Counted from the first letter of the whole stretch, positions 7,661-21,856 are shown. The stretch: DNA of 63,065 bases, filler included, from Platydemus manokwari (GCA_037951405.1; 6 parts of 6 records of this genome joined end to end with filler, not necessarily neighbours in it), one strand, 5' to 3'. Notes: generated by a model from the letters alone, not told the origin. Numbers and translations: made by a program.

Positions 7661-10600
7661 CTATTGCTGATTGAAATAATCTTGATCTACAAATAAAATG
7701 TCAACAAATATAAATGCGATTAATCGATATTTTATAAAATAACATTCACCTTCACAAATGTTCACATATTTAATGATGAAGTGATTGATGTAATCGTAAA
7801 TGAAAGCATATTGATCCTGAAAATAGATATTAAATAATTATTAATCAATGATTTGATATCAATTAACAATCAATTTAAATTTGAATTTGGAAATTATTGA
7901 GGAGGGACTCACCAGCTATAAGAGTTTGACAATTTTTATCCCATTAACAAATACTTTTATACTAGCTTGGTGTTAAAATAATAATTTGATTTTTGCCAGT
8001 GTTTTATGTTCTCTGAATTTTGATTGGTTGTTTTTCTGAAGAACAAGAATTATCACTAATTATAAAGACATTTTAATCGTAAGTGACATTTTATTGTCAT
8101 GAAAAGCTTTATTATTCGATAATAATATTTTTATTCTTTTCCATGCGATTTCTTCCAATATCTATCGAGTGGGTATTTAGCGATCAAAATGCCTAGCTGT
8201 GACTGGCTGTGATTCATCACAATTACTTAGCTATAAATAGTAATTTGATGTACCTAGTCAAATATTATTTATTTCCAAAATTATCTCATGTAACTATAGA
8301 ACATTTGCATTGGCTTAGGTAAGTTCTGGTCATACAAGTTGCTGAGGCTCACCAGGGGCCAATAAACATTAAGATTAAATAAAAATATTAATCTGCTTAA
8401 GCCAGCGATATTAAGTTTATTTAAAATTTCTGAATATGGTTGCATAGCGATATCCTCAATATTGATTTAGTCAAGAGATTTAGACAAAGCTGGCATCACG
8501 GAATTTGCAACTGTTAATCAAGTATTGAATGAGAAATACAAAAATTGTTGATCATCATCAAAGCTACGTGATTAGTAAAAAATTATTCTCAAATAATATC
8601 GTTTAATATTTATTTATAACTTTACCCGGTTCTGAACCATAAAATTGCGATATCTTCGTAAATTCAAGACTGTATTGTAAATATCGATTTCTTGACATCC
8701 GCTTATCAATTGTTTAATGATTCGATCGATACAAATGAATGTTCCAGTGTTCCCAACACCTGCACTGAATAAAGTACATGTCAATACAAAAATAGATGCT
8801 ATATAAATCGCAGATATATCTTTAACAATTCATGCGTGCATTCCTTATCATGTTATTGATAATCTTAATTAGAAATCGCGCACAGCTAGATAATGAATCA
8901 TTTATCAAATTTATTTTGAATTTAACGAATTTATCTATTTGTTTACCAGATATTTAATTTCGTTTTTTAATATTTAATATTAATTTATCTTTATATTTAT
9001 AATTATATTTTTATTTATTTTTTTGAAATATTTTTTAAAGATTTTTTATTTTAATATCGAAGTTATTAGATTTTTACCTTTATTTATCAGATTCATTCCA
9101 ATCCAATCATTTTTCAATAAAAGATATCAATAAATACTCAATTTAAACTCACCAGCAGTGAACCAAATATGGGTGATGAACACCCTCATTGTTGAGCTCG
9201 TGAAACCGAAAAAGCATTTTATCAAAATGATCTAAATTTGGAGCCAACTGATCCAGCCATGTATTCATGTGAATCTGTGTGATGTCTCTTTTTTCATTAA
9301 TTTTCTACACACATTCATCAAAAATAGTTATCAAAATCTTAAAACTGGAATACCACATTTTCTATCACCAGATGTCTCTCAATGAATGAATATTTTTCAT
9401 TTTCTCCAATCAAAGTTACATTAAACTGGTTTGCATCGCCATATGTGACCAATTCATTATTATGATTTGGCCAATACTGCGCACATCCAAATTTATCTCC
9501 CTCCATTGTTCTATATTTCGATAACGAAATTTCATTTATTATTCATCAATAATCACCTTGTCAACATGATTACACAATTGATATTTTGTTCCCAAATCAT
9601 TTCCCAAAACTCTGACAAAGTGTCATCCATTGGTCCGTGAGCAGCAATGTATTCAATTTTGTCATCATCATTTGCAAAAGGAATAAAACTAGCATTGATG
9701 TAATCACGAGGAAATCCTTTCTCACCAACTTTAACTCGGTTTTGATCGACTTTATCAATAATTAATTGTAAAGTAATTAAATGAAAAATAACAAGGTAGA
9801 ATGTTCACAAATCGATTATTATTTCTATTTCTCGAATTTGTGCCAGCCTCAAATGTTAGACCCAATGATTTCTGAAGGACTTTGGTTTCAGTTGATAAAC
9901 ACTTTTGATAAAACAACGAATAATTGCAGAACAATTCCATAAATATAATACTTCATATTCCTCAACAATTCTGTTCTTACTTGGTCTGTCGTGAAACTCA
10001 GAAATTGCAACAACAGAGTTAGATCTATTGATTTGTATAAATGTATTTGTTAACTGATTTAAAACTGTATTACTTGGCTAGTGGAAATGCTTTCTGCTTG
10101 ATGTCTCCAGATGTTTCACTAATCATTTGATATTAGATATTTAAATATATCAAATATTAACCTCGATATTATCCTTGGTTTGGACCCCTTGCTCTCGATA
10201 TATGGTGTTTTAACATAAATAGGACTAAAATACCAAATTCATCAAATCACAATCATAATATATAATCAATAAAATCACCACAACAAACCAGAGGATATTT
10301 TGATATATTTTAATAAAAATGAGTTCAATAAAATTAAATACAAATTATTAATTATTGTTTTATTAAATTAAATAAATCAATATTTATTTATTATAGATAT
10401 TATGAAATAATACTCGGATCTATCTGTTGTTACCAATGAGACTTGATATAAAGATCCACCATTTCTTTTGTAAAGAAAACTTCGAAATCAATAAATAAAA
10501 TAAACAAATGTAAATATTTACTTGTTTTGATTGATTAGTTTACCACTCCTTAAAATCAATATAAAACCAATAATAAAACAAATCAGTAGAGAAGCAATGA

Positions 10601-10853
10601 GAATGATGGTTATTGTTATTCTTAAACGAGGCTCTTTCGATTCACTTTGATTAATTGTTGAATCTTTCTTGATCAATTGATGAATTCCCATCATGTTGAT
10701 GCCGAAGATCTCGACTGAATAATTGGACAGCATTTCATCAAATTTGAAGAGAACAGAAAATGAGGTGTTTTGTATTGGAAATGTTTGATTTTGTAAATCA
10801 ATACATTTAAGCAATCGATTTCTGGAATTGTGTTGTGTTTCATTTAAATATAT
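7661..10853 (-). CDS. Receptor-type protein tyrosine phosphatase, 3' part (end of ectodomain, TM helix, single PTP domain); 5' end lost at spacer
   Basis: Twelve GT-AG exons join in frame: 10853-10522, 10479-10414, 10224-10162, 10118-10074, 10024-9952, 9901-9793, 9749-9557, 9510-9354, 9304-9153, 8764-8626, 7816-7750, 7686-7661. They encode TM ITITIILIASLLICFIIGFILIL, then NNRFVNILPFDQNRV, DYINAS, YIAAHGP, FWEMIWEQ, CAQYWP, WLD, VHCCAGVGNTGTFI, MVQNRDQYAFIY and a TAG stop. Confidence 0.93.
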
Positions 10854-10929
10854 CTTGAAATAAAATCAATAAATATAATTAAAATATCTAAATAAAAAAT
10901 TAAATATTTATTGATAAAAATCCAATGAC

Positions 10930-11029
10930 NNNNNNNNNNNNNNNNNNNNNNNNNNNNNNNNNNNNNNNNNNNNTTAATTAATTAANNNNNNNNNNNNNNN
11001 NNNNNNNNNNNNNNNNNNNNNNNNNNNNN
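10930..11029. other. Artificial contig spacer (44N-TTAATTAATTAA-44N)
   Basis: The same 100-nt construct occurs five times. TTAATTAATTAA places stops in all six frames. Confidence 0.98.
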
Positions 11030-11058
11030 CATTTCATGGGATATCATAGAATGTTTAC

Positions 11059-11482
11059 CATGTGAAGTTTGAAGGCACTCTTCCAAATTGATATCATCAT
11101 TTAATGGATCACTAAATATATCACCGAGTTCTGAAAGATGAGTCAATATCTAAATCTCACATTCTACAAGAACATTTACCCTGTGAATCCCGAAAGCACT
11201 CATCAAGATTGATTTCATCGTCTGAAATAATAACATATCACATTAAATTCAATGAATTTTCATTTCATGTTTACCTCCAAAAATCTCCTTGAAAGTATCG
11301 TCAATGTCTTTTTGAGTAAGAAAACCTGAAAAGAAAATTATAATGATAAATGACATTTTATCAATTAATACTCAATATATTAGAGTCGTCCTCAACAATG
11401 TCAGATTGTGGAATGGAATTGTTCTGAAAATATCGATTATTAAACAGGAAATCGTTGGAAAATCATTTACAATTCGTTGCAT
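11059..11482 (-). CDS. Micro-exon acidic-repeat gene, paralogue A (5' part; truncated at spacer)
   Basis: GT-AG exons 11482-11471 (12 nt), 11423-11372 (52), 11325-11275 (51), 11221-11180 (42), 11130-11059 (72) give MQRI|NNSIPQSDIVEDDSNILS|FLTQKDIDDTFKEIFGD|DEINLDECFRDSQE|LGDIFSDPLNDDINLEECLQTSH. Homologous to the genes at 17520-18433 and 20993-21827. Confidence 0.8.
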
Positions 11483-11859
11483 TGATTTGTTAAATTTTTG
11501 GAATTGTTTCCTTGACGAATGTTATTTATATTGTTGAACAAATGGTAGTAAAATTTATGATGACAAAAGGATTGGAACGCTGTTTCCGTTATGGGGATCG
11601 GTTTTTTGGAAAAATATATTTATTTATGAATAATAAAATTAAAAATCGAAAATCGATAACAAAATTTTCTTCAAAATTATGAACTTTCAAATTTATTTAT
11701 AATTCGTAATTGGATACACTCAAATCAATTTGACTTCAATTACAAATTAATTAATTATTGATTTAATTAATATTGTTTCTTATTGATTTATTGATTTTCT
11801 TTTTCTTCTTCTCACCAAAAAATAAAAAATAAAAAAATGATAGGCAAATCCCAATACTC

Positions 11860-12015
11860 GATGCTGTCATAAACAATGGAATGCAGATTGATTTCTCGTC
11901 CAGTACCAGGACTAACAGTGTAAAACGAAATTAATCAATTTTTATAACGTCAATGTGAGGGATTTCTCCACCGCCTAATGTAGACCATGTTTATGTGTAA
12001 TAAATATTGATTTAT
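11860..12015 (+). mobile_element. 5'-truncated 3' end of a non-LTR retrotransposon (same family as 22900-24350)
   Basis: Aligns by eye to 24198-24350, e.g. ATGTGAGGGATTTCTCCACCGCCTA...TAATAAATATT versus ATGTGAGGGATTTCCTACTGCCTA...TAATAAATATT. Confidence 0.6.
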
Positions 12016-14029
12016 TTTCAATAATTGGGAGCATGCTATGATATTTTTAAAATTCCTCGGAAATCACTCTCAATCTTATAGAAATGATTTTTCAACTTGT
12101 TGCTATGGCGATAAATGACCACTCCTCTATCCGATTACACAATTGAATCAATTTCCTTTTTATGGCCATCATCATTACATAATATTTTCATCATTAATAA
12201 GACAATCAATGATTTTCATATTTTTTTTAACAAATAACCACTTCAATATATCGATATCAATGAACGTTAAAATTATTTATTTATGTTTGTCGACTTTGTG
12301 TAGCTGACACTTCTTTTGAGTGGAAATAACTCATCACAGATATTCGTGGAGAAAGTTAAGAAAGAAGTTAATAAAACTGTCGCAGAAATTCAGGTCATAG
12401 TTTTCTAGGAACTCGATTGATCATAAAATATATCCTCTTGATAACTGGAAACAATCCCTTGAGGACAGGGGACAGTCAAAGTATTGAATAAACCGAATAC
12501 AAAAATGTCTTAACGGCAAGCCATTAATTGAGATATTTTTAGTAAATCATGTGCAAATGAATTTTTAGAAGTTTTTTCAGACTTTTTGCTGTCAAAACGC
12601 CGAATATATGTGAAGGAGAATGCATGTAGGAGAATGCATGCAAGGAGAATGACAATATGATGGATGTTTAAAAAGATCTTTAAAATTAATTTACATTTTA
12701 GGTTTCCAGATTTCAAGCAAAAAATAAACATTTGCTGCATTTATATTGCTGTCGTCAATATTTCTCAGTTGATGTTGCCATAGAAACAACATTATTTCGT
12801 AGAGATCATAATTGATTATCAAAATATCATTTCATTCAATTTTGATAAACTCATGTTTACCGAACCAACTTTCTTCCGAATACGATAAGAAATTCTAGCA
12901 ATTTATAAACATCACAAAACATAAAATTGTGAAGCAGAGAAATTTTAAACACGAATTTTTCGAATAATTGAGAAGTGCTATTATTGATTGTTAAAAATTT
13001 TAGTGCTGATTTATTAAAGAACAGTTTGATTATTATTAAGTATAATTTCAAATATTATTTACTTACAAAATGTAAGTAATATAAATTACATATAAAATTC
13101 AAATGATAAAAGATTATCTAATTATACACCTATCACGACATACTAAACATACACAATTGAAGACTTAGACAATTGTTATTTTAAGAGATTTATCGATATT
13201 TATCTATATTTTTATTGACAGAATTGTTATTATAATATTATTATTAATGAATTTATATTTATTTAATCTATATTTGATTGAAGTAGTTATTGAACCTTAT
13301 GTCTCACGATTTTAATCCGGGGAATTCAGAGCATCGTAGAGTCTCACTCTTCAGGTCACCATTATTTAATTTCAATCCTCAAAAATTTTCATAGGTAGAG
13401 CAAATTATCAGTGATCAAGTTGTTCTGGACTTCAACTCATGTCGAGAATTGCCATACGTTTTCCTTTTCTAAATCTAACTCCCTTACACTATTTAAGTTC
13501 ACACTGAATCAAACAGGTCGTTCTGGTTAATAAGCTTAATTTGTAACATTAAGTGTACAAAAAATTGATCTCTCGGGTTGCAACCAGGGTAAAGAAAATA
13601 CATGTCTCAGAGTTTGATAAACTTGGTTCCAGTTTCAAACTTCTTCTGAAATTACTTCTGGGTACTATCACAAAATATTCCAGTAACAAGTCCTGCTTCT
13701 TTACAATACTCATTACTTACATAGTAACTCAAAAGATAATACTTGTAAAATGCATTAGTTCATATGGTTCCAATGTGAATTTAAAGAGTTAACCCTCCTA
13801 TTCAAATTCCTATTTTCAACATTCGTCACTTCAGTGTGCTTTCTATTCGTGTGTTCACATTCAACATGAATATTTACCTACTGTTGCTATCGATTATAAT
13901 TAACACTTACCTTAAAAATCAACGTACGTCCTTTTTAATTAAACTAGCATTCGGTTGTGTATATCACAAATCAATCAAAATGGTCACAAGAATCAAGGAA
14001 AAACTCTAAAAAATATTCGATACACACAA

Positions 14030-14400
14030 ACTCAATAAGCACATGTGCCGTAAACCAATCAGATTCATTCTAATGTCAATCCATATTTAATAGGAAAGAA
14101 TAGACAGGCACTTGCCTGAAAACGGCAGCAAGCCCAAAAATCGTCCAACAGTACGAGAGATTTAAGGAAAATCCACAAACAAATTCAGCGAATTGAAAAC
14201 GAAGATCAATGACATAAAGCAGAGACACCGGATGGGTCTATAAAAGAGGTTAAATTCCATAGTCGGTAACTTTAGTGCTTAGCTTATGTGTGATTTTCGT
14301 AATCAGTCTTTTTGAATACTCTTCATTCTGTTTTTGACTTTCAGACGTGATCCCATCTTGAATGATTTTCTTTGTGAATTGCGTAGAGGTTTGTTATTGT
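14030..14400 (+). repeat. LTR-like dispersed repeat (copy 1; inverted relative to 18880-19275)
   Basis: Shares blocks with the reverse complement of 18880-19275: CACATGTGC..AACCAATCAGATTCATT, GACAGGCAC, GTACGAGAGAT, GAAAACGAAGATC, TATAAAA, CATTCTGTTTTTGACTTTC. Contains CCAAT and TATA motifs. Confidence 0.7.
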
Positions 14401-17400
14401 TATTATTGAGATTTTGAGTGTATTATTTTGGTTAATACAGATTTGTAGATCCAAAGCGTTGTTTGATAACGCAACACTTCTCAAATCGCCTAATATTTAT
14501 TTTGATTTATATACTCACTATTTTTGGAATTATACTTATCATTCTCATTGAAAATATTATTAATTATCTTTTTTTTTACTTTGATCTATTTTTACCTTTT
14601 ATTTTATTTATATTTATAATTGTGCTCTTGATCTGGTTCATTATTACGATTCCCATATTTCTTTATTTATTGGATCTATTAAATTCGTGGTAAAGTATTT
14701 GATGGATTGTTTAGTAACGATCTTTTGGTAGTGGATAACTCAACAATGTCCTGCAATAAATGGTAATATCGGTGGTTACGTTCAGAGTAATAATAAATAA
14801 AGGAATCGGATCAAAGTAGATTGAGATTTGTTTTAATACAGTTCTGCGCTCAACCCAATATGTTAGTTTGTTTACATTATAACCAATAAACCTTAAAAAT
14901 TGATTTACTAAAACCCAAATCACTTATACGACTAAAAATATAATACTGATGCCTTTCAAAGGTTTATTTCATTTAGTTATCTAAAAAAATGAAAGGGAAT
15001 CTGAGATCGATTCTACCTATAATGCTTTCAATGACTAAAATTATCAACTTTAACAATATTTTTAATAAATAAATAATCGATATTTTTTATTATTAATAAT
15101 AGCTGATCAACACATTTAAATAATTTATGCTTTGAATATAAGTCGCCACTATTCGTAGGTGGATTTTAATTAGTTGGGTTTTAGTTCTCATTAGATCTTT
15201 CTTGTTTAGACTTTAAATTCATTGAAAATTATTTATGATTGATCTTTGGTGGCCTTTGAAACTTTTGTTAAGAATGAAAACAATTTAAATCAATAAAACC
15301 ATCATCAATATTTATAAACCAATAATCTCATGTTCATCAATAAATGTAACGAGAAATCAAATCACGTCTGCAAACATTGGAACAGTTTCATTTTATGCAA
15401 AAGTATTTAAAGTTAGCAGGAAATCATTTTAAAATCCAAATCAATGCGAGGTGATTGACGGAAGCAAAAACAATATATTAAACCTACAGGATATGGAACC
15501 TTTTAAAATTTATTGGCGTTGGTAATTAAATCTTTTAAAAAACTTTTAAACAAGCTTGGAGTAAATAAAAAACTGAAAATATAGTCGACAGTGGGAATTA
15601 AATCTCTTAAACATCGTGGAAAACTCTAAGAGAATAATATTATCAATTTTTAATGAAATTTTAAAAACTTAAATCGGGCTTTAAATTTAAAATTTAAAAT
15701 AAAACAACGAAACAAGTTAAATGTGAAACGTAACAATAAAATACCATGAATATCAAAACGTGTAAACAATAAATGTTTACGTTATATGCCTTACGAAAAT
15801 AAATGAAATTACCATATCAACCTAAGTTGTTACTATGGCAATTCATATATTATTAAGATAAACTTTTTAAAACCAATCAATCACATACAGGTTAAGCGTG
15901 AAAAGAAATTCTATAAGTTCAATTATCAAATCACAATAATTTGCGCAAATAGTAAGAGCTGTCTTCGAATCAACAATCAATCATAAGCAAATTTTATAAT
16001 AGATGTCATAATAATGCTCATTATGGAATTATTAACCATTTACAAACCGGTCAAAGTTCTTAAAGAACCTTAGACATCGTTCTAACTTACTTATTCTTAG
16101 ACTTTCTTTTCACTCCAGATTATGCTGCATTTGTTCTTAACATTGATTGTTCAATCCTTCAATGGAAGTCAGGTGATACACAAAATTTAATACATCTCAC
16201 AATAGCTATCATATCGTTACGATATTATTATTTATGCTCTAATAAGTCCATGTGAATTATTTTAAATCAGCTTGAGTGGAATAATTTGATTGTAACATCT
16301 TCTAAAAGACTCTTGAGAAAAAACCATTTTGAGTTATGTAATCATATATGAACTGAATTTTAGAGGCAGTTCCATAATTGGCATTTTCTTACTATTTTTG
16401 AAGTTTTACGAGTACAGAGAGCAGGTTGTTGATGATAGTCCGCAAATTTGAGAAGACAATTTTGATACTGTTGATGATATTGTTCCAAATGAAGTTTATT
16501 TCGGGAGACTAAGCGTTGAACTTGAAGCTTTTAAAATAATGTTTATCTGGAGCTTTTCCTTTAGTTTGCCTACCGAGAGTTGGTTATGATTGAAGACGAA
16601 TATGAGGTTGATGTTGCTGTTGATAATTGTCCACGAGTATAGAGTGATAGTTGGTATAATGTTATGAAGATTGATTTATTGCTCGACTCTATAGTTCGAT
16701 TTGGACTTATCGTATTATCAAAGATCACAAAATTATGGAAACCAATCTATGTTTTTTTCTTGATCATCAGTGAAGGTGCTCAAACGTAGTTAGTTAAAGG
16801 CTGTGTGAATAACTAAATGCTTTTCGCGATTATGTGATTGTCGTGCTTTATTCTTTAATCCGAAACATTCAAATTTTTGGTGACCAACTAGCAGTACTAA
16901 ACAATGCACATATCTACAAGAATTTTGGCTTTGAATTTGAGTCATGCACACCACGAGCCATATAGACCTGAGCCATAATGAGCTCTTATAAAGCCAATTG
17001 TTTAAAAATTGACTTCAGAAATAATACCTTTATTGGATATGATTGAATATTAATAGCAACCAATAATTTACAAAAATAATGGATTAGAATTAGAGATCTC
17101 ACATGAAAATTTTTTGTCCAGAGTTTAATTTAAATTTTTACCAATTTTCTGAACTTATGAAAATTTTACCATTGAAGTTGTAGTTTTTTAAGGAAAACCA
17201 GGTGAATCAGATACATAAAATTACACACAACACACAAAAATACCAATGAGAACTAATCAATAACAATTCCAATATTTTACAATTTATTTCATATATTTGA
17301 TTTCGTGTCGAATCAAACTTCATAAAATTATCAATAATATGGAACGGCAAGATACAACCAGTTAACCGATGACGTATTATTCGATAAAAATAGAACGATT

Positions 17401-17519
17401 TACAATGACAAACTAGATAATTATTGAAAGAAATAAAAGTCATGATACGGGATAATAATCATCACAGACACCATCTCAACTTTCATCCAAACCATCAAAA
17501 CTGGTTTGGTTCCAAAATT

Positions 17520-18433
17520 TTAAATATCTAATTTCCTTTTCTTACGAATATTATCGGAATCTTCAATGATTTTCGAATTGTATAAATATTCATGATTTTC
17601 TGAATCGAATTGTCTCTTTAAATTGGTCCTTGATGAATTGATTTCCACCAATGATTGATTGGTGATTGTTTTATAAGAATCTTTGAGCATTCTTCTATTT
17701 GGTGGTAATTGGCCAAATTTATCGATTGTCGTAAAACCAGAAGAATATCCACTAGAATCATTAGAATTATCAAATCTGGTGTTTTTCGTCCACATTCCAT
17801 TAGATTCACTGATTACTTGATGTGGGACGTGGTTGCCATAGATATGACCGAATTGGTTATTTGTGTTGGAATTATATCTCAATTGATATTGTTGTGCATA
17901 TTGGTGATGATAAACATTATTATTGATTGATGGAAAAGTTGGTCGAACGTTGCCATAACAATTGCCATGGAATCCATTATAATACTGATAATTGAATGGA
18001 TATGAGTGATTATTGACCAAGATCATATTGGCCTCATTAAAAGTATTATCATTCTGTAATCCACCATAGAGAATGCCATCATCGATTTCTAAAATAGACA
18101 ATCATATACAGTGAAATTTGTTGAAATAAAATTAACCGTTTGATTCCAAAAAGCATTCATCTAAATTGATTTCATCATTTGAATCAAAATTTTCATGATC
18201 ACTACAATTTCTTTCAATAGAACGTAATGTTTCTTCCACTTCTTTACTATTCAAGAAATCTAAAATTAAAACAGAGATTTTTCCCCTCAATATCTAATCA
18301 TTAAAACAAACTTGATGGATCGATAAATAGGTCCAATTTTGGCAACTCATATAGGTATTGATTATTCTATTAACGTAATAATCAATAAATTATCATAATA
18401 ATCAATAAGTAAAAATATAACAATTGGTTCCAT
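17520..18433 (-). CDS. Acidic-repeat family paralogue B, complete (252 aa): acidic N-terminus, N/Q/Y/H-rich low-complexity middle, C-terminal NLS-like motif
   Basis: Exons 18433-18422 (12 nt), 18366-18312 (55), 18259-18137 (123), 18088-17520 (569) total 759 nt and stay in frame: MEPI|NNQYLYELPKLDLFIDPSN|FLNSKEVEETLRSIERNCSDHENFDSNDEINLDECFLESNE|IDDGILYGG...YQYYNGFHGNCYGN...HHQYAQQYQLRYNSN...KRQFDSENHEYLYNSKIIEDSDNIRKKRKLDI*. Confidence 0.82.
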
Positions 18434-18879
18434 TGATGTACTGAATGAATTCTGATATCAAATGTATTTATAATAAAGTATTAACTAATAAAAAAAATCA
18501 ATAAAATAAATATTATGACATAATTTTTAAATTAGTCGAAAAAACAATTTTTTGCCTTTGAATTTCTCAAATTTTATAAAAACAGATGAGAGTCGGGACG
18601 TTAATCTAACATTGTAATAAATCGATGCTGATGTACTCATCGAAATAATTTCTGATATATTTAATTATGGTTGACAACAAAATTCCAATAAATTCTCCAT
18701 AGTAACCAAATCAATTATGTAATACAGTGTAATAAAATCAATAATTTTTATTGATTTTTTTAGTTTCAGGTAGAAATTTGAATAACAAATCTTGAATATA
18801 CCAGTTGGATGTATTAATCAACAATTAGATCTGAAAGCTATGTTATCCAAAATATCACAATTGTAATCTTGACAACCAC

Positions 18880-19275
18880 AAACAAATCTTTTTACAACTC
18901 ACAATGGTCAATCACAAGACGGGATCAGCACCCGAAAGTCAAAAACAGAATGGAAATTAATAAAAAAGACTAATTACTAAAAATCACACAAAGACAAGCT
19001 TAACACGCGAGTTACCGATTAAAAAGACTGGCAATTATTCATGGAACTCTTTTATAAGCCTATTGGGTATGTCTGCTTGATGTCACGGATCTTCGTTTTC
19101 CATTTGCTGAATTCGTTCGTAGTCCGATTTACTTGAAATTTACCTCGCATCTCTCGTACCATTGGCGGATAATTGAGCTTGTTGCCATCTGTAGATATGT
19201 GCCTGTCGATTTTGCGTCTAAATATGGATTAATATTAAAATGAATCTGATTGGTTGACAGCACATGTGTTTATCG
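18880..19275 (-). repeat. LTR-like dispersed repeat (copy 2)
   Basis: Its reverse complement aligns with 14030-14400 over about 370 nt with moderate divergence. A shorter, more diverged piece lies at about 30150-30240. Confidence 0.7.
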
Positions 19276-20597
19276 GGTCTGATATGATGATTAGGTTTCT
19301 ATTGGCCACGACAAAATTTTTCTTTTTAATGTTGAAATATTTAACGAATTTAAATGGTATTTTTCGTTGATAATTTTGAAAATGATTTCAATGAAATTAA
19401 CTATAGTTAGTACGCTACACAATGAACTACTTTTTGAGCACTGATTTTTATCGATTTTTTTAATGTGACCTTATCATTAATTAATCTAATAGCCAAGTGA
19501 ACTATTCTATATAAGTTTTCGTACTCAATAATCATTTTCAAATAGCAATAAAACCTGCTGTATTTATTGGAAAAATTTATCTTAATTTTGAAATATAAAC
19601 AGTAAAAAAATAAATATGTGATACTCAAAAATACAAATATTATATATCTTGTGAGTTACACATTGTTAATCTCAACACGAAATACATTGATAGTCCAGAT
19701 TTATAGCCATTTTTACTTAATGAAATTAACTTATCAGACTTAATAAGAATTTACCAACATTAGCAACCCTTCTAATCGGACGAGCAATGATCGGCATGGA
19801 ACTTAACAGATATGAACTTAACCACATATAATATTACAGAACTAATCTCTAGGAAAGTCTCTAGCATTCTGGTGGGGAAAGTTATAGAATCTTATTCTGA
19901 CAAAGTTATTTTAAAATACAATTTTTATGAAATAAATATTTATTTATAACGTATTGCAAATCACATCCATCATTCAATAATGATATATAGTTGTTACTAC
20001 GGGCGACTGTTGCCTGTTACAAATGGAATTAGTTCCACATTAGTATATCTTTCACAACGATACTGACATAAATTTTATCCCAATTAATATTTATAAATAA
20101 AACGGTAGAAATTATTAGAAGGCTTCGAAATTAGACAAAACTTTGTCAATTCTACCCATCAGTTACCATAGGAAATTACCTTTAAATATTGCAGATGCTT
20201 AAATAAACTGAAATCAGTCAGTTCAATCACACTTCATTCAATACATGTACTTTGTAAACCAATACAGGAAGCACTTATTTTAATATGTTTTAAATCATGA
20301 ATATTTTCCATTTCATTGGTAAGGTTTGCAAGATTTTCTAGCTCTACCATGGTTTAACATAATTACTTTAATCACGGCATCGGGTGTGTTTAGAGTCTTC
20401 CAAAAACTAATAATAATAAAAGGGCTGGGTAAATTTACCAATACATGTTCTATATTATTCACTTATATTTTCAGATGATGTCTGTTAAACCTTAAAAATT
20501 CTCTGCGAATAATATTCATCTTTTAATATTCAACAATTCAATGAATATAAAAACCTCTGTAAAAGTTATTCTTTGTAAAGATAAATAGCGGTTTGAA

Positions 20598-20629
20598 AAA
20601 TTTCCCGCTTTTCTTGCGACCACCCTGTA
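20598..20629 (-). mobile_element. Lone Tc1/mariner-like terminal inverted repeat
   Basis: Minus strand reads TA|CAGGGTGGTCGCAAGAAAAGCGGG. TA followed by CAGGGTG is a typical Tc1/mariner end. No partner TIR found. Confidence 0.35.
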
Positions 20630-20992
20630 TATTAATAATATCACGAAGACGTCATCATTATTGTTGCTAATGGAAACTGTTGGTGTGATATAACTGATTT
20701 ATAAATTTGTAAGCCATTCAAATCACAAGTCGGGAAATGTTCTAAGTGAGCATATCATTTCTTAAAGGATATAAAATGAAAATAAGATTTTTCCCATGAT
20801 CCAATTAATGACCTAAAAGTTATTTAATATCGCTAAATTTTTAGAATACTAATAAGTCAATCAAATGTTTATTCTCCAAAACCAATCCCTCAAATTATTT
20901 GTCGACCGATCCCCACCGTTTCCTTAATTTTTTTTATTTAAAATTTCCTCATATAAATAACGAATTGATTTTCTCCAAAATACTAATCTGAA

Positions 20993-21827
20993 ATGTTAAA
21001 AACAGTAAATCAAGGACATTCAAAGACCTATTTTTAATAATTTTAAATTTTTCAGAAAAATTCTATCATAGCACCAAAGAAAAAGTCATCCGAATCTGAT
21101 ATTGTCGTTAGGGACTTTGATTCGTCAAGTATAAATTGATGAAACTAATTTGTAGATTTTTTTAATAATTTTGATATCGTTTCAGATTGTCTTACGCAAC
21201 AATATCTGGATGATACTTTTAAGGAAATATTTGGAGGTGAGAATGGAATGAGATTTTAATGGGTTTACTTTTTCTTAAATTATTTTAGATTTCGAAATTA
21301 ATCTTGATAAACGATCTCCAGATGCAAAAGGTAAAGATTCATTGAATTTGTAATAAAATGAGATTTAAATATTGATTATTCATGTAGAACTCGATGTCAT
21401 AGTTAATGATTCGTTCAATGACGAAATCAATTTCGATAATTTTCCTCAAGATTCCAAAGGTAAAATTTGATAATGTAACCGTAGATGAACAATTTGATAT
21501 TGGTTTATATTTCAGATCTCGGTGACACATTAAATAAACTATTAAATAATGGTTGATATAGTTTCAGGTTTGCTGACAGAACAAGAAGTTGAGGATGCTC
21601 TCAATAATATTTTTGGAGGTGTGTAGCATAAATGGGATTTATTATATTTACTATCACATACTATTTCAGATGAAATCAATCTTGATGAGTGCTTTCGGGA
21701 TTCACAAGGTAAATATTGTTGTGGAATGAGATTTAAATATTGATTCTTCTTTCAGAACTCGGTGATATATTCAGTGATCCATTAAATGATGATATCAATT
21801 TGGAAGAGTGCCTTCAAGATTCACATG
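20993..21827 (+). CDS. Micro-exon acidic-repeat gene, paralogue C (5' part; truncated at spacer)
   Basis: GT-AG exons 20993-21004 (12 nt), 21056-21128 (73), 21186-21236 (51), 21289-21330 (42), 21388-21459 (72), 21516-21521 (6, tentative), 21568-21618 (51), 21670-21708 (39), 21756-21827 (72). Translation: MLKT|KNSIIAPKKKSSESDIVVRDFDSSN|CLTQQYLDDTFKEIFGD|FEINLDKRSPDAKE|LDVIVNDSFNDEINFDNFPQDSKD|LG|LLTEQEVEDALNNIFGD|EINLDECFRDSQE|LGDIFSDPLNDDINLEECLQDSH. Confidence 0.82.
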
Positions 21828-21856
21828 GTAAACATTCTATGATATCCCATGAAATA

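What the first reader, a model, noticed from the sequence alone, without database searches (positions are those of the whole stretch)
11059..21827. Unrecognised three-gene family built from symmetric phase-1 micro-exons encoding acidic 'DEINLDECF' modules
Seen: three paralogues on one contig (A 11482-11059 minus, B 18433-17520 minus, C 20993-21827 plus). Each has a 12-nt first coding exon (MQRI, MEPI, MLKT) and a second exon ending in phase 1. Cassette exons follow that are all multiples of 3 and flanked by phase-1 introns of 46-57 nt. A 51/42(39)/72-nt exon triplet occurs once in A and twice in tandem in C. In B a single 123-nt exon (=51+72) carries the first and last modules fused. The encoded motifs are acidic with spaced hydrophobic residues: xLTxxx(I/L/V)(D/E)DxFxxIFGD and (D/E)EINL(D/E)ECF. 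Established: symmetric micro-exons can be skipped without frameshift, as in Schistosoma micro-exon genes, though those encode secreted proteins. Inference: this is a lineage-specific nuclear regulator family with no signal peptide, in which the number of acidic modules changes by exon duplication and possibly by skipping. It is the best candidate for an undescribed system in this window.
Basis: partly seen in the sequence, partly recalled or inferred. Interest (0 to 1): 0.82.

Follow-up and report, generated by a model that had tools for sequence, protein, structure and literature searches.

The report
Orphan acidic-repeat gene family, symmetric exons
Three neighbouring genes of an AT-rich eukaryote look like a real family with no detectable relatives, encoding disordered acidic proteins built from duplicated short in-frame exons, but there is no expression data and the nuclear-regulator role is only inferred.

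Summary
All 17 exons lie at the stated coordinates with GT..AG borders. The cassette exons (51, 42/39, 72 and 123 nt) are all phase 1-1, and the acidic motifs recur in the same frame.

A loose GT..AG chain of open exons is common by chance here. The support comes from other evidence:
- A strict splice grammar recovers gene A exactly; 0 of 300 simulations gave four exons.
- B ends in a 193-codon ORF (0.007 expected).
- TATAAAT lies 39-48 nt upstream of all three ATGs.
- Exon borders are homologous across the paralogues.
- There is a modest synonymous excess (p about 0.01).

A and C are cut off by the contig ends. A is an inverted copy of C's 3' triplet (95% identity).

No relatives turned up in Pfam, two word searches, a profile search of 1.84 billion proteins, PDB, the ESM Atlas or JGI metagenomes. 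No RNA run exists, so expression and exon skipping are untested.

All three proteins lack a signal peptide and pass a published composition rule for acidic activation domains. B is predicted disordered and ends in RKKRKLDI.

Verdict: a plausible taxon-restricted gene family. The architecture is a known evolutionary pattern. Its function is inferred, and interest is moderate to low.

The parts
11059..11482 (-). Gene A, 3'-truncated by the contig end. Coding exons: 11482-11471 (12 nt), 11423-11372 (52), 11325-11275 (51), 11221-11180 (42), 11130-11059 (72). 76 aa are seen, with net charge -17.
   Evidence: The strict splice-grammar search recovers exactly this four-exon chain.
17520..18433 (-). 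Gene B, complete, 252 aa. Exons: 18433-18422 (12), 18366-18312 (55), 18259-18137 (123, equal to the 51- and 72-type modules in one exon), 18088-17520 (N/Y/S-rich tail ending RKKRKLDI, then stop). All three donors are GTT.
   Evidence: The borders of the 123-nt exon coincide with the acceptor of the 51-nt exon and the donor of the 72-nt exon of A and C. The tail is predicted disordered.
20993..21827 (+). Gene C, 3'-truncated by the contig end. Exons: 20993-21004 (12), 21056-21128 (73), 21186-21236 (51), 21289-21330 (42), 21388-21459 (72), 21568-21618 (51), 21670-21708 (39), 21756-21827 (72). 137 aa are seen, with net charge -23.
21516..21551 (+). Dead remnant of a 72-nt-type exon inside C's 108-nt intron. 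It is 36 nt, open in phase 1, and 27/36 identical to the first half of exon 21756-21827. Only 16 nt separate it from the next exon, and read-through meets a stop.
   Evidence: and direct reading of the sequence.
11524..11530 (-). TATAAAT 48 nt upstream of A's ATG.
   Evidence: There are only 20 TATAAAT on both strands of the piece.
18466..18472 (-). TATAAAT 39 nt upstream of B's ATG.
20952..20958 (+). TATAAAT 41 nt upstream of C's ATG.
21357..21375 (+). Conserved intronic element AATGAGATTTAAATATTGA, just upstream of C's first 72-nt exon.
   Evidence: The piece holds 3 matches (0.07 expected), each in the intron before a 72-nt exon.
21725..21743 (+). The same intronic element before C's second 72-nt exon. 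It is 19/19 identical to the first copy, although the flanking exons are only about 70% identical.
11143..11161 (-). The same intronic element (3 mismatches) before A's 72-nt exon.
11031..11219 (.). Left arm of the terminal inverted repeat, pairing with 21669-21855. Identity is 95% over the last 129 nt and 92% over the next 63 nt, falling to 78% at the 51-nt exon.
   Evidence: I1, I3, I6.
21669..21855 (.). Right arm of the terminal inverted repeat.
   Evidence: A Logan contig with exactly A's differences lies on this stretch (record 7).

Best explanation
This is a real gene family with no detectable relatives. At least three paralogues sit on one contig, in an AT-rich eukaryote with minimal introns of about 50 nt.

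Each gene starts with a TATA-box promoter, a four-codon first coding exon and a short second exon that ends in phase 1. Symmetric phase-1 exons follow, and each encodes one acidic amphipathic module. Two module types occur:
- xLTxxx(I/L/V)(D/E)DxFxxIFG, predicted helical.
- (D/E)EINL(D/E)EC(F/L).

Shown: the array grew and shrank by tandem duplication and deletion of exon-plus-intron units. The 3' parts of A and C were homogenised recently, probably by gene conversion between the inverted copies.

Inferred: the products are intrinsically disordered intracellular proteins, probably nuclear. Their repeated hydrophobic-x-x-hydrophobic-hydrophobic motifs in an acidic setting (FKEIF, LNNIF, LDECF, LEECL) would work like acidic activation domains. 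That is, they would bind a coactivator-type surface weakly and multivalently, so that module number sets avidity.

Expression, localisation and exon skipping are not shown.
For: Gene reality:
- Splice borders are canonical and the frames stay open.
- The strict-grammar search recovers A's chain exactly, and 0 of 300 simulations gave four exons.
- B's 193-codon ORF is expected 0.007 times.
- TATAAAT lies at -48, -39 and -41 of the three ATGs.
- Intron positions and phases are the same in diverged paralogues, including both borders of B's 123-nt exon.
- Synonymous differences exceed non-synonymous ones in the older comparisons. C triplet 1 against triplet 2 gives pS 0.50 and pN 0.28; B against A gives 0.63 and 0.43. 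The pooled one-sided Fisher test gives p = 0.012.
- The genes sit at single-copy depth of about 13, unlike the neighbouring repeat.

Duplication:
- The triplets align with their introns.
- A remnant exon survives.
- Identity between the inverted A and C copies declines inward, 95% then 92% then 78%.

Function:
- No signal peptide; net charges are -17, -12 and -23.
- 12, 8 and 18 39-aa tiles of A, B and C pass the published acidic activation-domain rule, which is charge <= -9, W+F+Y+L >= 7, plus a diagonal term (rule read). 72% of that rule's predictions on human transcription factors were active when tested (PMC10550315, read).
- AlphaFold models module 1 of B as a helix (residues 4-21, pLDDT 80-88) and the EINLDECF part as a short helix of lower confidence.
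- B's tail is predicted disordered (pLDDT 36) and ends in RKKRKLDI.
Against: - There is no transcript evidence at all.
- With bare GT..AG rules, spliced ORFs of this size arise by chance.
- All three donors in B are GTT, and its second-exon acceptor (aatag) is weak.
- The 51-nt exon of A against C's second copy shows pN >= pS, so constraint is weak.
- An intron element is better conserved than the exons. This could mean the unit is constrained as DNA or RNA rather than as protein.
- No DNA-binding or other domain was found, so nothing would tether an activation domain.
- The composition rule was calibrated on human transcription factors, not on arbitrary acidic proteins.
- The nuclear signal is a short basic run, seen at the C-terminus in B only.
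- A and C are incomplete.
Confidence: 0.5

Rival explanations
1. The genes are real but the job is different. The acidic modules are short linear motifs for another partner or ligand, for example a histone- or basic-protein-binding chaperone or decoy, a cation binder, or a cytoplasmic scaffold. They would not be transcription-related.
For: - The gene evidence is the same as for the best explanation.
- No DNA-binding domain was found.
- Each EINLDEC(F/L) module has a conserved cysteine that activation domains do not need.
- The composition rule gives false positives (PMC10550315, read).
Against: - The EF-hand-like look of the LTxxxIDDxFKEIFGD helix drew no Pfam match, even at E = 10.
- Nothing matched in PDB.
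- B carries a classical basic cluster at its C-terminus.
Confidence: 0.25
2. These are not functional genes. They would be decaying or never-expressed ORFs in a repeat-rich, gene-poor stretch. The 'exons' would be units of a duplicated DNA segment whose open frames and splice-like borders survive by recency and chance.
For: - Loose spliced ORFs are common by chance.
- The intron element is as conserved as the exons, or more so.
- One unit is visibly degenerate.
- There are no relatives anywhere and no RNA data.
- The contig is otherwise without convincing genes and carries a repeat of very high summed depth.
Against: - The strict splice grammar is beyond all 300 simulations.
- B's 193-codon ORF joins in frame to a module exon.
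- TATA boxes sit at matching distances in all three genes.
- The only length difference between homologous exons is a multiple of three (42 against 39 nt).
- Synonymous differences are in excess.
- The frame is kept between B and A/C at only about 50% nucleotide identity.
Confidence: 0.17
3. They are members or analogues of the micro-exon gene (MEG) class of secreted, alternatively spliced parasite proteins.
For: Short symmetric exons make up most of the module region.
Against: - There is no signal peptide.
- Introns are 46-108 nt, not kilobases.
- Exons are 39-123 nt.
- There is no sequence similarity to anything.
- MEGs are defined as secreted proteins with exons of 3-81 bp and long introns (bioRxiv 10.1101/2023.06.21.545858, abstract).
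Confidence: 0.03
4. Gene A is an assembly artefact, a fold-back or chimeric inverted copy of C's end, so the family here has only two members.
For: - The two contig ends are inverted repeats that stop at the same homologous base.
- The Logan contig carrying A's variants has depth 7 against about 13 for the flanks.
Against: - The arms are 95%, 92% and 78% identical, not 100%.
- A has its own promoter, first two exons and a single triplet.
- A's variants are present in an independent contig build of the run (record 7).
- A third variant of the 72-nt exon (21760 C>T, depth 22) points to still more copies.
Confidence: 0.05

Closest known systems
Schistosoma micro-exon genes (MEGs)
   Same: The coding region is built largely from short symmetric exons. 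Units can therefore be added, lost or skipped without a frameshift. Both are taxon-restricted and fast-evolving.
   Different: MEGs encode secreted proteins with a signal peptide. Their exons are 3-81 bp and their introns reach 5 kb (bioRxiv 10.1101/2023.06.21.545858). Here there is no signal peptide, introns are about 50 nt, exons are 39-123 nt, the products are strongly acidic, and no sequence similarity exists.
Acidic transcriptional activation domains (VP16 H1, CITED2, Gcn4 and p53 type)
   Same: Both are disordered and strongly acidic, with interspersed F/L/I. Hydrophobic-x-x-hydrophobic-hydrophobic motifs lie on a predicted amphipathic helix. The proteins here pass the published charge plus W/F/Y/L rule (PMC10550315, PMC8137143).
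   Different: Known activation domains sit on proteins with a DNA-binding domain or on defined cofactors. No such domain is seen in B, and A and C are incomplete. The modules here are tandem and each lies on its own exon. Activity is untested.
Symmetric (1-1) exons encoding intrinsically disordered modules, expanded by tandem exon duplication
   Same: This is the general pattern described for human genes: phase-symmetric exons, enriched in disorder, serve as units of modular evolution (PMC3632108, abstract's companion search). All cassette exons here are 1-1, and the products are predicted disordered or helical.
   Different: That description is a statistical trend in large vertebrate genes. 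Here the whole protein region is built this way in a compact gene with minimal introns, and the introns were duplicated along with the exons.

Membership tests
Schistosoma-type micro-exon genes (MEG) | Most of the coding sequence lies in short symmetric exons | tested here: met
   The cassette exons of 39, 42, 51, 72 and 123 nt are all phase 1-1. They are larger than typical MEG micro-exons.
Schistosoma-type micro-exon genes (MEG) | N-terminal signal peptide; secreted product | tested here: not met
   The highest 10-residue Kyte-Doolittle mean in the first 35 aa is 0.37-0.70, so there is no hydrophobic core.
Schistosoma-type micro-exon genes (MEG) | Long introns between the micro-exons | tested here: not met
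   Introns measure 46-57 nt, with one of 108 nt.
Schistosoma-type micro-exon genes (MEG) | Sequence relatedness to a MEG family | tested here: not met
   No hits in the profile search of 1.84 billion representatives, the word searches or Pfam.
Schistosoma-type micro-exon genes (MEG) | Protein variation by exon skipping | not testable with these tools
   No RNA run holds the locus.
Acidic activation domain (functional class) | Composition: 39-aa tiles with net charge <= -9, W+F+Y+L >= 7 and the diagonal term (PMC10550315, eq. 1) | tested here: met
   A has 12 of 38 tiles passing (residues 27-76), B has 8 (residues 40-85) and C has 18 (residues 69-137).
Acidic activation domain (functional class) | Disordered region able to form a short amphipathic helix | tested here: inconclusive
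   AlphaFold on B's 40-aa module exon gives helix 4-21 at pLDDT 80-88 and helix 32-39 at about 60. B's tail has pLDDT 36. Both are predictions from very shallow alignments.
Acidic activation domain (functional class) | Carried by, or recruited to, a DNA-binding protein in the nucleus | tested here: inconclusive
   No DNA-binding domain in B. There is a basic RKKRK cluster at B's C-terminus and PKKK in C. A and C are truncated.
Acidic activation domain (functional class) | Activates a reporter when tethered | not testable with these tools
   Needs a GAL4-DBD fusion assay.
EF-hand calcium-binding motif | Match to EF-hand profiles; canonical 12-residue loop with Gly at position 6 and Glu at position 12 | tested here: not met
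   The LTxxxIDDxFKEIFGD helix recalls the first helix of calmodulin (from memory). However, Pfam gave no EF-hand hit at E <= 10. By direct reading, the following DDEINLDECFRD lacks the loop glycine and the terminal glutamate.

The most novel reading that the evidence does not exclude
A taxon-restricted family of nuclear cofactors made of several activation-domain-like modules. The number of acidic modules per protein would be set in evolution by duplication of exon-intron units. In the cell it would be set by regulated skipping of the symmetric 72-nt cassette exons, controlled by the conserved 19-nt intronic element that precedes each of them.
Probability: 0.1. Interest if true: 0.55.

Novelty: new variant of a known kind. 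Interest (0 to 1): 0.3.

Why it matters
If the genes are expressed, they are a clean small example of how a new disordered protein family grows. One short linear motif sits on each symmetric exon, each exon was copied together with its minimal intron, and gene conversion occurs between inverted paralogues.

If the modules do act as activation domains, the family would be a natural series of proteins with 2, 3 and 6 or more copies of the same motif. That series would help in studying how motif number affects binding to coactivators.

Without transcripts, an organism name or any relatives, it remains an unannotated orphan family of the kind most new eukaryotic genomes contain.

Tried and rejected
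- RNA evidence: the single public holder is a DNA run kept as contigs, so the junctions could not be tested.
- Rfam at E <= 0.1 and a tRNA scan of the whole piece found nothing.
- Pfam on B's tail, B's module exon, a 72-nt exon and the whole visible C protein gave only sub-threshold noise: CUB at E = 0.02, DUF5760 at E = 0.14.
- Word-index searches with B's tail (candidates 103-329 aa) and with C's 137 aa (candidates 75-240 aa) found nothing.
- The exhaustive profile search of 1.84 billion representatives gave 0 hits. Only 23 profile positions were used, so a protein with a single module could not have reached significance.
- JGI metagenome contigs: 337 pattern matches, none confirmed by tblastn. 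A first attempt failed for lack of a conserved stretch.
- PDB sequences: nothing.
- ESM Atlas: only unnamed clusters for the module exon and no usable hit for B's tail.
- Exact look-up of B's 168-aa ATG ORF in public assemblies: not on record.
- tblastn of A, B and C against the piece found no further copies in the 6 kb between A and B or elsewhere in the piece.
- Tandem Repeats Finder does not see the exon array, because the copies are too diverged.
- EF-hand idea: rejected.
- MEG membership: rejected (see the membership test).
- The bare GT..AG spliced-ORF argument was rejected as evidence after the null model.
- The organism could not be identified with the tools at hand.
- I did not use the third word search. 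I judged that it would add little after the exhaustive profile search.


Full report
**What the piece is.** Places 11030-21856 are one 10.8-kb contig of a eukaryote with 25-34% G+C. Its apparent introns are about 50 nt, with gtaa-type donors and tttcag-type acceptors. Apart from the three genes of the finding, six-frame reading shows no other convincing coding stretch. Rfam and the tRNA scan found nothing.

**Observation.** I rebuilt the three models from the sequence.
- A (minus strand) has coding exons of 12, 52, 51, 42 and 72 nt.
- B (minus strand) has 12, 55, 123 and 569 nt, stop included.
- C (plus strand) has 12, 73, 51, 42, 72, 51, 39 and 72 nt.
- Second exons end in phase 1, and all later internal exons are phase 1-1.
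- Introns measure 46-57 nt, apart from one of 108 nt in C.
- The encoded modules recur as described: xLTxxx(I/L/V)(D/E)DxFxxIFG on the 51-nt exons, and (D/E)EINL(D/E)EC(F/L) on both the 39/42-nt and the 72-nt exons.
- B's 123-nt exon begins at the position of the 51-nt exon's acceptor and ends at the position of the 72-nt exon's donor, in the same phases. It is the two-module unit without the internal exon and introns.
- B is complete at 252 aa.

**Corrections to the picture.**
- A and C both run off the contig, 29 nt into the next intron, at homologous bases.
- The contig ends are inverted repeats. Places 11031-11159 pair with 21727-21855 at 95%, the next 63 nt at 92%, and the 51-nt exons at 78%.
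- A is therefore an inverted paralogue of C. Its 3' part was homogenised recently with C's second triplet, while its 51-nt exon is closer in protein to C's first triplet. A and C also share promoter sequence.
- The shared break point suggests that the copies become too similar to assemble further out.
- A is not a fold-back artefact. The arms differ, A has its own 5' exons, and a contig with exactly A's differences exists in the run's independent contig set.
- The 108-nt intron of C contains a 36-nt remnant of a 72-nt-type exon (21516-21551). It cannot be spliced in, because only 16 nt separate it from the next exon and read-through meets a stop.

**Is it more than chance?** The spliced open frame alone is not.
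- With bare GT..AG rules, introns of 44-60 nt and exons of 36-130 nt, open chains of 4-7 exons appear in most Markov simulations. The longest real chain of this kind lies in intergenic DNA.

The case rests on other points.
- With the splice grammar these genes use (TT[TC]AG acceptor, GT[AG] donor), the search returns A's four exons exactly. Real intergenic DNA gives 0-2 exons. 300 simulations gave 1-2, and 3 only once.
- B's last exon is a 193-codon open frame, expected 0.007 times in the piece. It joins in frame to a module exon.
- TATAAAT lies 48, 39 and 41 nt upstream of the three ATGs. Only 20 such heptamers occur on both strands of the piece.
- The four-codon first exon, the phase-0 first intron and the N-N/K-N start of exon 2 are shared by all three genes.
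- Homologous exons differ in length only by a multiple of three (42 against 39 nt).
- In the older comparisons, synonymous differences exceed non-synonymous ones. C triplet 1 against triplet 2 gives pS 0.50 and pN 0.28; B against A gives 0.63 and 0.43. The pooled one-sided Fisher test gives p = 0.012.

Three weak points remain. Constraint is modest. The 51-nt exon of A against C's second copy shows no synonymous excess. All three donors in B are GTT.

**Intron conservation.** The 19-nt sequence AATGAGATTTAAATATTGA occurs three times in the piece (0.07 expected). Each copy lies in the intron just upstream of a 72-nt exon. The two copies in C are identical, although the adjoining exons are only about 70% identical. 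A looser form of the motif sits in the intron before B's 123-nt exon (reading). Part of it (TTGAT, about 14 nt before the AG) could be the branch site of a minimal intron. The rest could be a splicing control element, which would fit regulated inclusion of the 72-nt exon. It could also be a conversion tract. This cannot be settled here.

**Relatives.** None were found.
- Pfam gave only noise.
- The word-index searches with B's tail and with C's 137 aa were blank.
- A profile of the EINLDEC module searched exhaustively against 1.84 billion representatives gave no hit at E <= 0.001. With 23 profile positions, only proteins carrying several modules could have scored.
- JGI metagenome contigs gave 337 pattern matches, none confirmed.
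- PDB sequences and the ESM Atlas gave nothing useful.
- B's ORF is not in the public gene-position index, so the source genome seems unannotated.
- The only public run that holds the DNA is a 2024 DNA data set. Expression is therefore untested.

**What the proteins look like.**
- None has a hydrophobic N-terminus.
- A, C and the first 64 residues of B have pI about 4 and net charges of -17, -23 and -13.
- B's remaining 188 residues are N/S/Y-rich and near neutral. AlphaFold predicts them disordered (mean pLDDT 36, single sequence). They end in RKKRKLDI.
- C has PKKK near its start.
- AlphaFold models the first module of B's exon as a helix (residues 4-21, pLDDT 80-88) and the EINLDECF part as a short helix of lower confidence.
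- In module 1 the hydrophobic residues sit at positions 1, 2, 7, 11, 14 and 15, which forms one face of a helix.
- Both module types contain a hydrophobic-x-x-hydrophobic-hydrophobic core in an acidic setting: FKEIF, LNNIF, LDECF, LEECL.
- All three proteins pass the published composition rule for acidic activation domains, with 12, 8 and 18 tiles respectively (rule from PMC10550315, read). That rule's predictions on human transcription factors were active in 72% of tests. It was not calibrated on other kinds of protein.

**Mechanism.**
- Shown: a family of small genes whose module region is a tandem array of exon-plus-intron units. The array changed by duplication, partial deletion and conversion.
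- Inferred at moderate odds: the products are intracellular, disordered and probably nuclear.
- Inferred at lower odds, about 0.3: the modules act like acidic activation domains, each binding a coactivator-type surface weakly, so that copy number tunes avidity.
- Against this, no DNA-binding domain or known partner is seen, and the conserved cysteine in each EINLDEC module has no role in that model.
- Rivals are another ligand for the acidic motifs, or non-functional ORFs in a repeat-rich region.

**Comparison with known things.** Membership in the Schistosoma micro-exon gene class fails on signal peptide, intron length and sequence (bioRxiv 10.1101/2023.06.21.545858). Only the symmetric-exon logic is shared. 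The architecture fits the general rule that phase-symmetric, especially 1-1, exons encoding disordered segments are units of modular evolution (PMC3632108). A resemblance of module 1 to the first EF-hand helix was not borne out.

**Verdict.** The genes are probably real and have no detectable relatives. The nuclear-regulator reading is plausible but inferred, and the skipping idea is untested. This is an orphan family with a tidy, already understood mode of growth, and not a new kind of system. Interest is 0.3.

Noticed in passing
window 14040-14440 (+) and 18860-19282 (-): Two inverted copies, about 80% alike, of a roughly 400-nt element that contains CCAATCAG and TATAAAAG. In the run's contigs the summed depth over 18885-19282 is 9,000-13,500, against about 13 for flanking DNA, and many variants carry internal deletions. 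It is therefore a very abundant dispersed repeat. It has no Rfam or tRNA match and no long ORF.
   Followed up: partly
window 20477-20675: Summed contig depth is about 247, against about 13 for the flanks. This is a second repeat of moderate depth, lying 300-500 nt upstream of gene C.
   Followed up: no
window 21671-21856: Depth is about 43. Besides C's own sequence and A's variant contig, a third variant is present (21760 C>T, depth 22 of 29). At least one more near-identical copy of the 72-nt exon therefore exists elsewhere in the genome.
   Followed up: partly
window 11592-11601 (-) and 20906-20915 (+): CCGATCCCCA occurs only twice in the whole window, about 110 and 87 nt upstream of the ATGs of A and C. 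Each is followed by ACGGAAAC or its reverse complement. It may be a shared promoter element, and it is not seen upstream of B.
   Followed up: partly
window 18421, 18311, 18136 (minus-strand donors of gene B): All three introns of B begin GTT (gttata, gtttgt, gttaat). All 13 donors seen in A and C, including the two at the contig ends, begin GTA or GTG. Either this organism tolerates +3 T, or B is spliced less efficiently.
   Followed up: no
window 11030 and 21856 (contig ends): Both ends of the contig stop at the same homologous base of the inverted repeat. This is as expected if the assembler broke where the two copies become indistinguishable. One Logan contig runs 30 nt past the right end.
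   Followed up: partly
window 12611-12651: A short 14-nt tandem repeat (TGAAGGAGAATGCA, 2.9 copies) in intergenic DNA.
   Followed up: no
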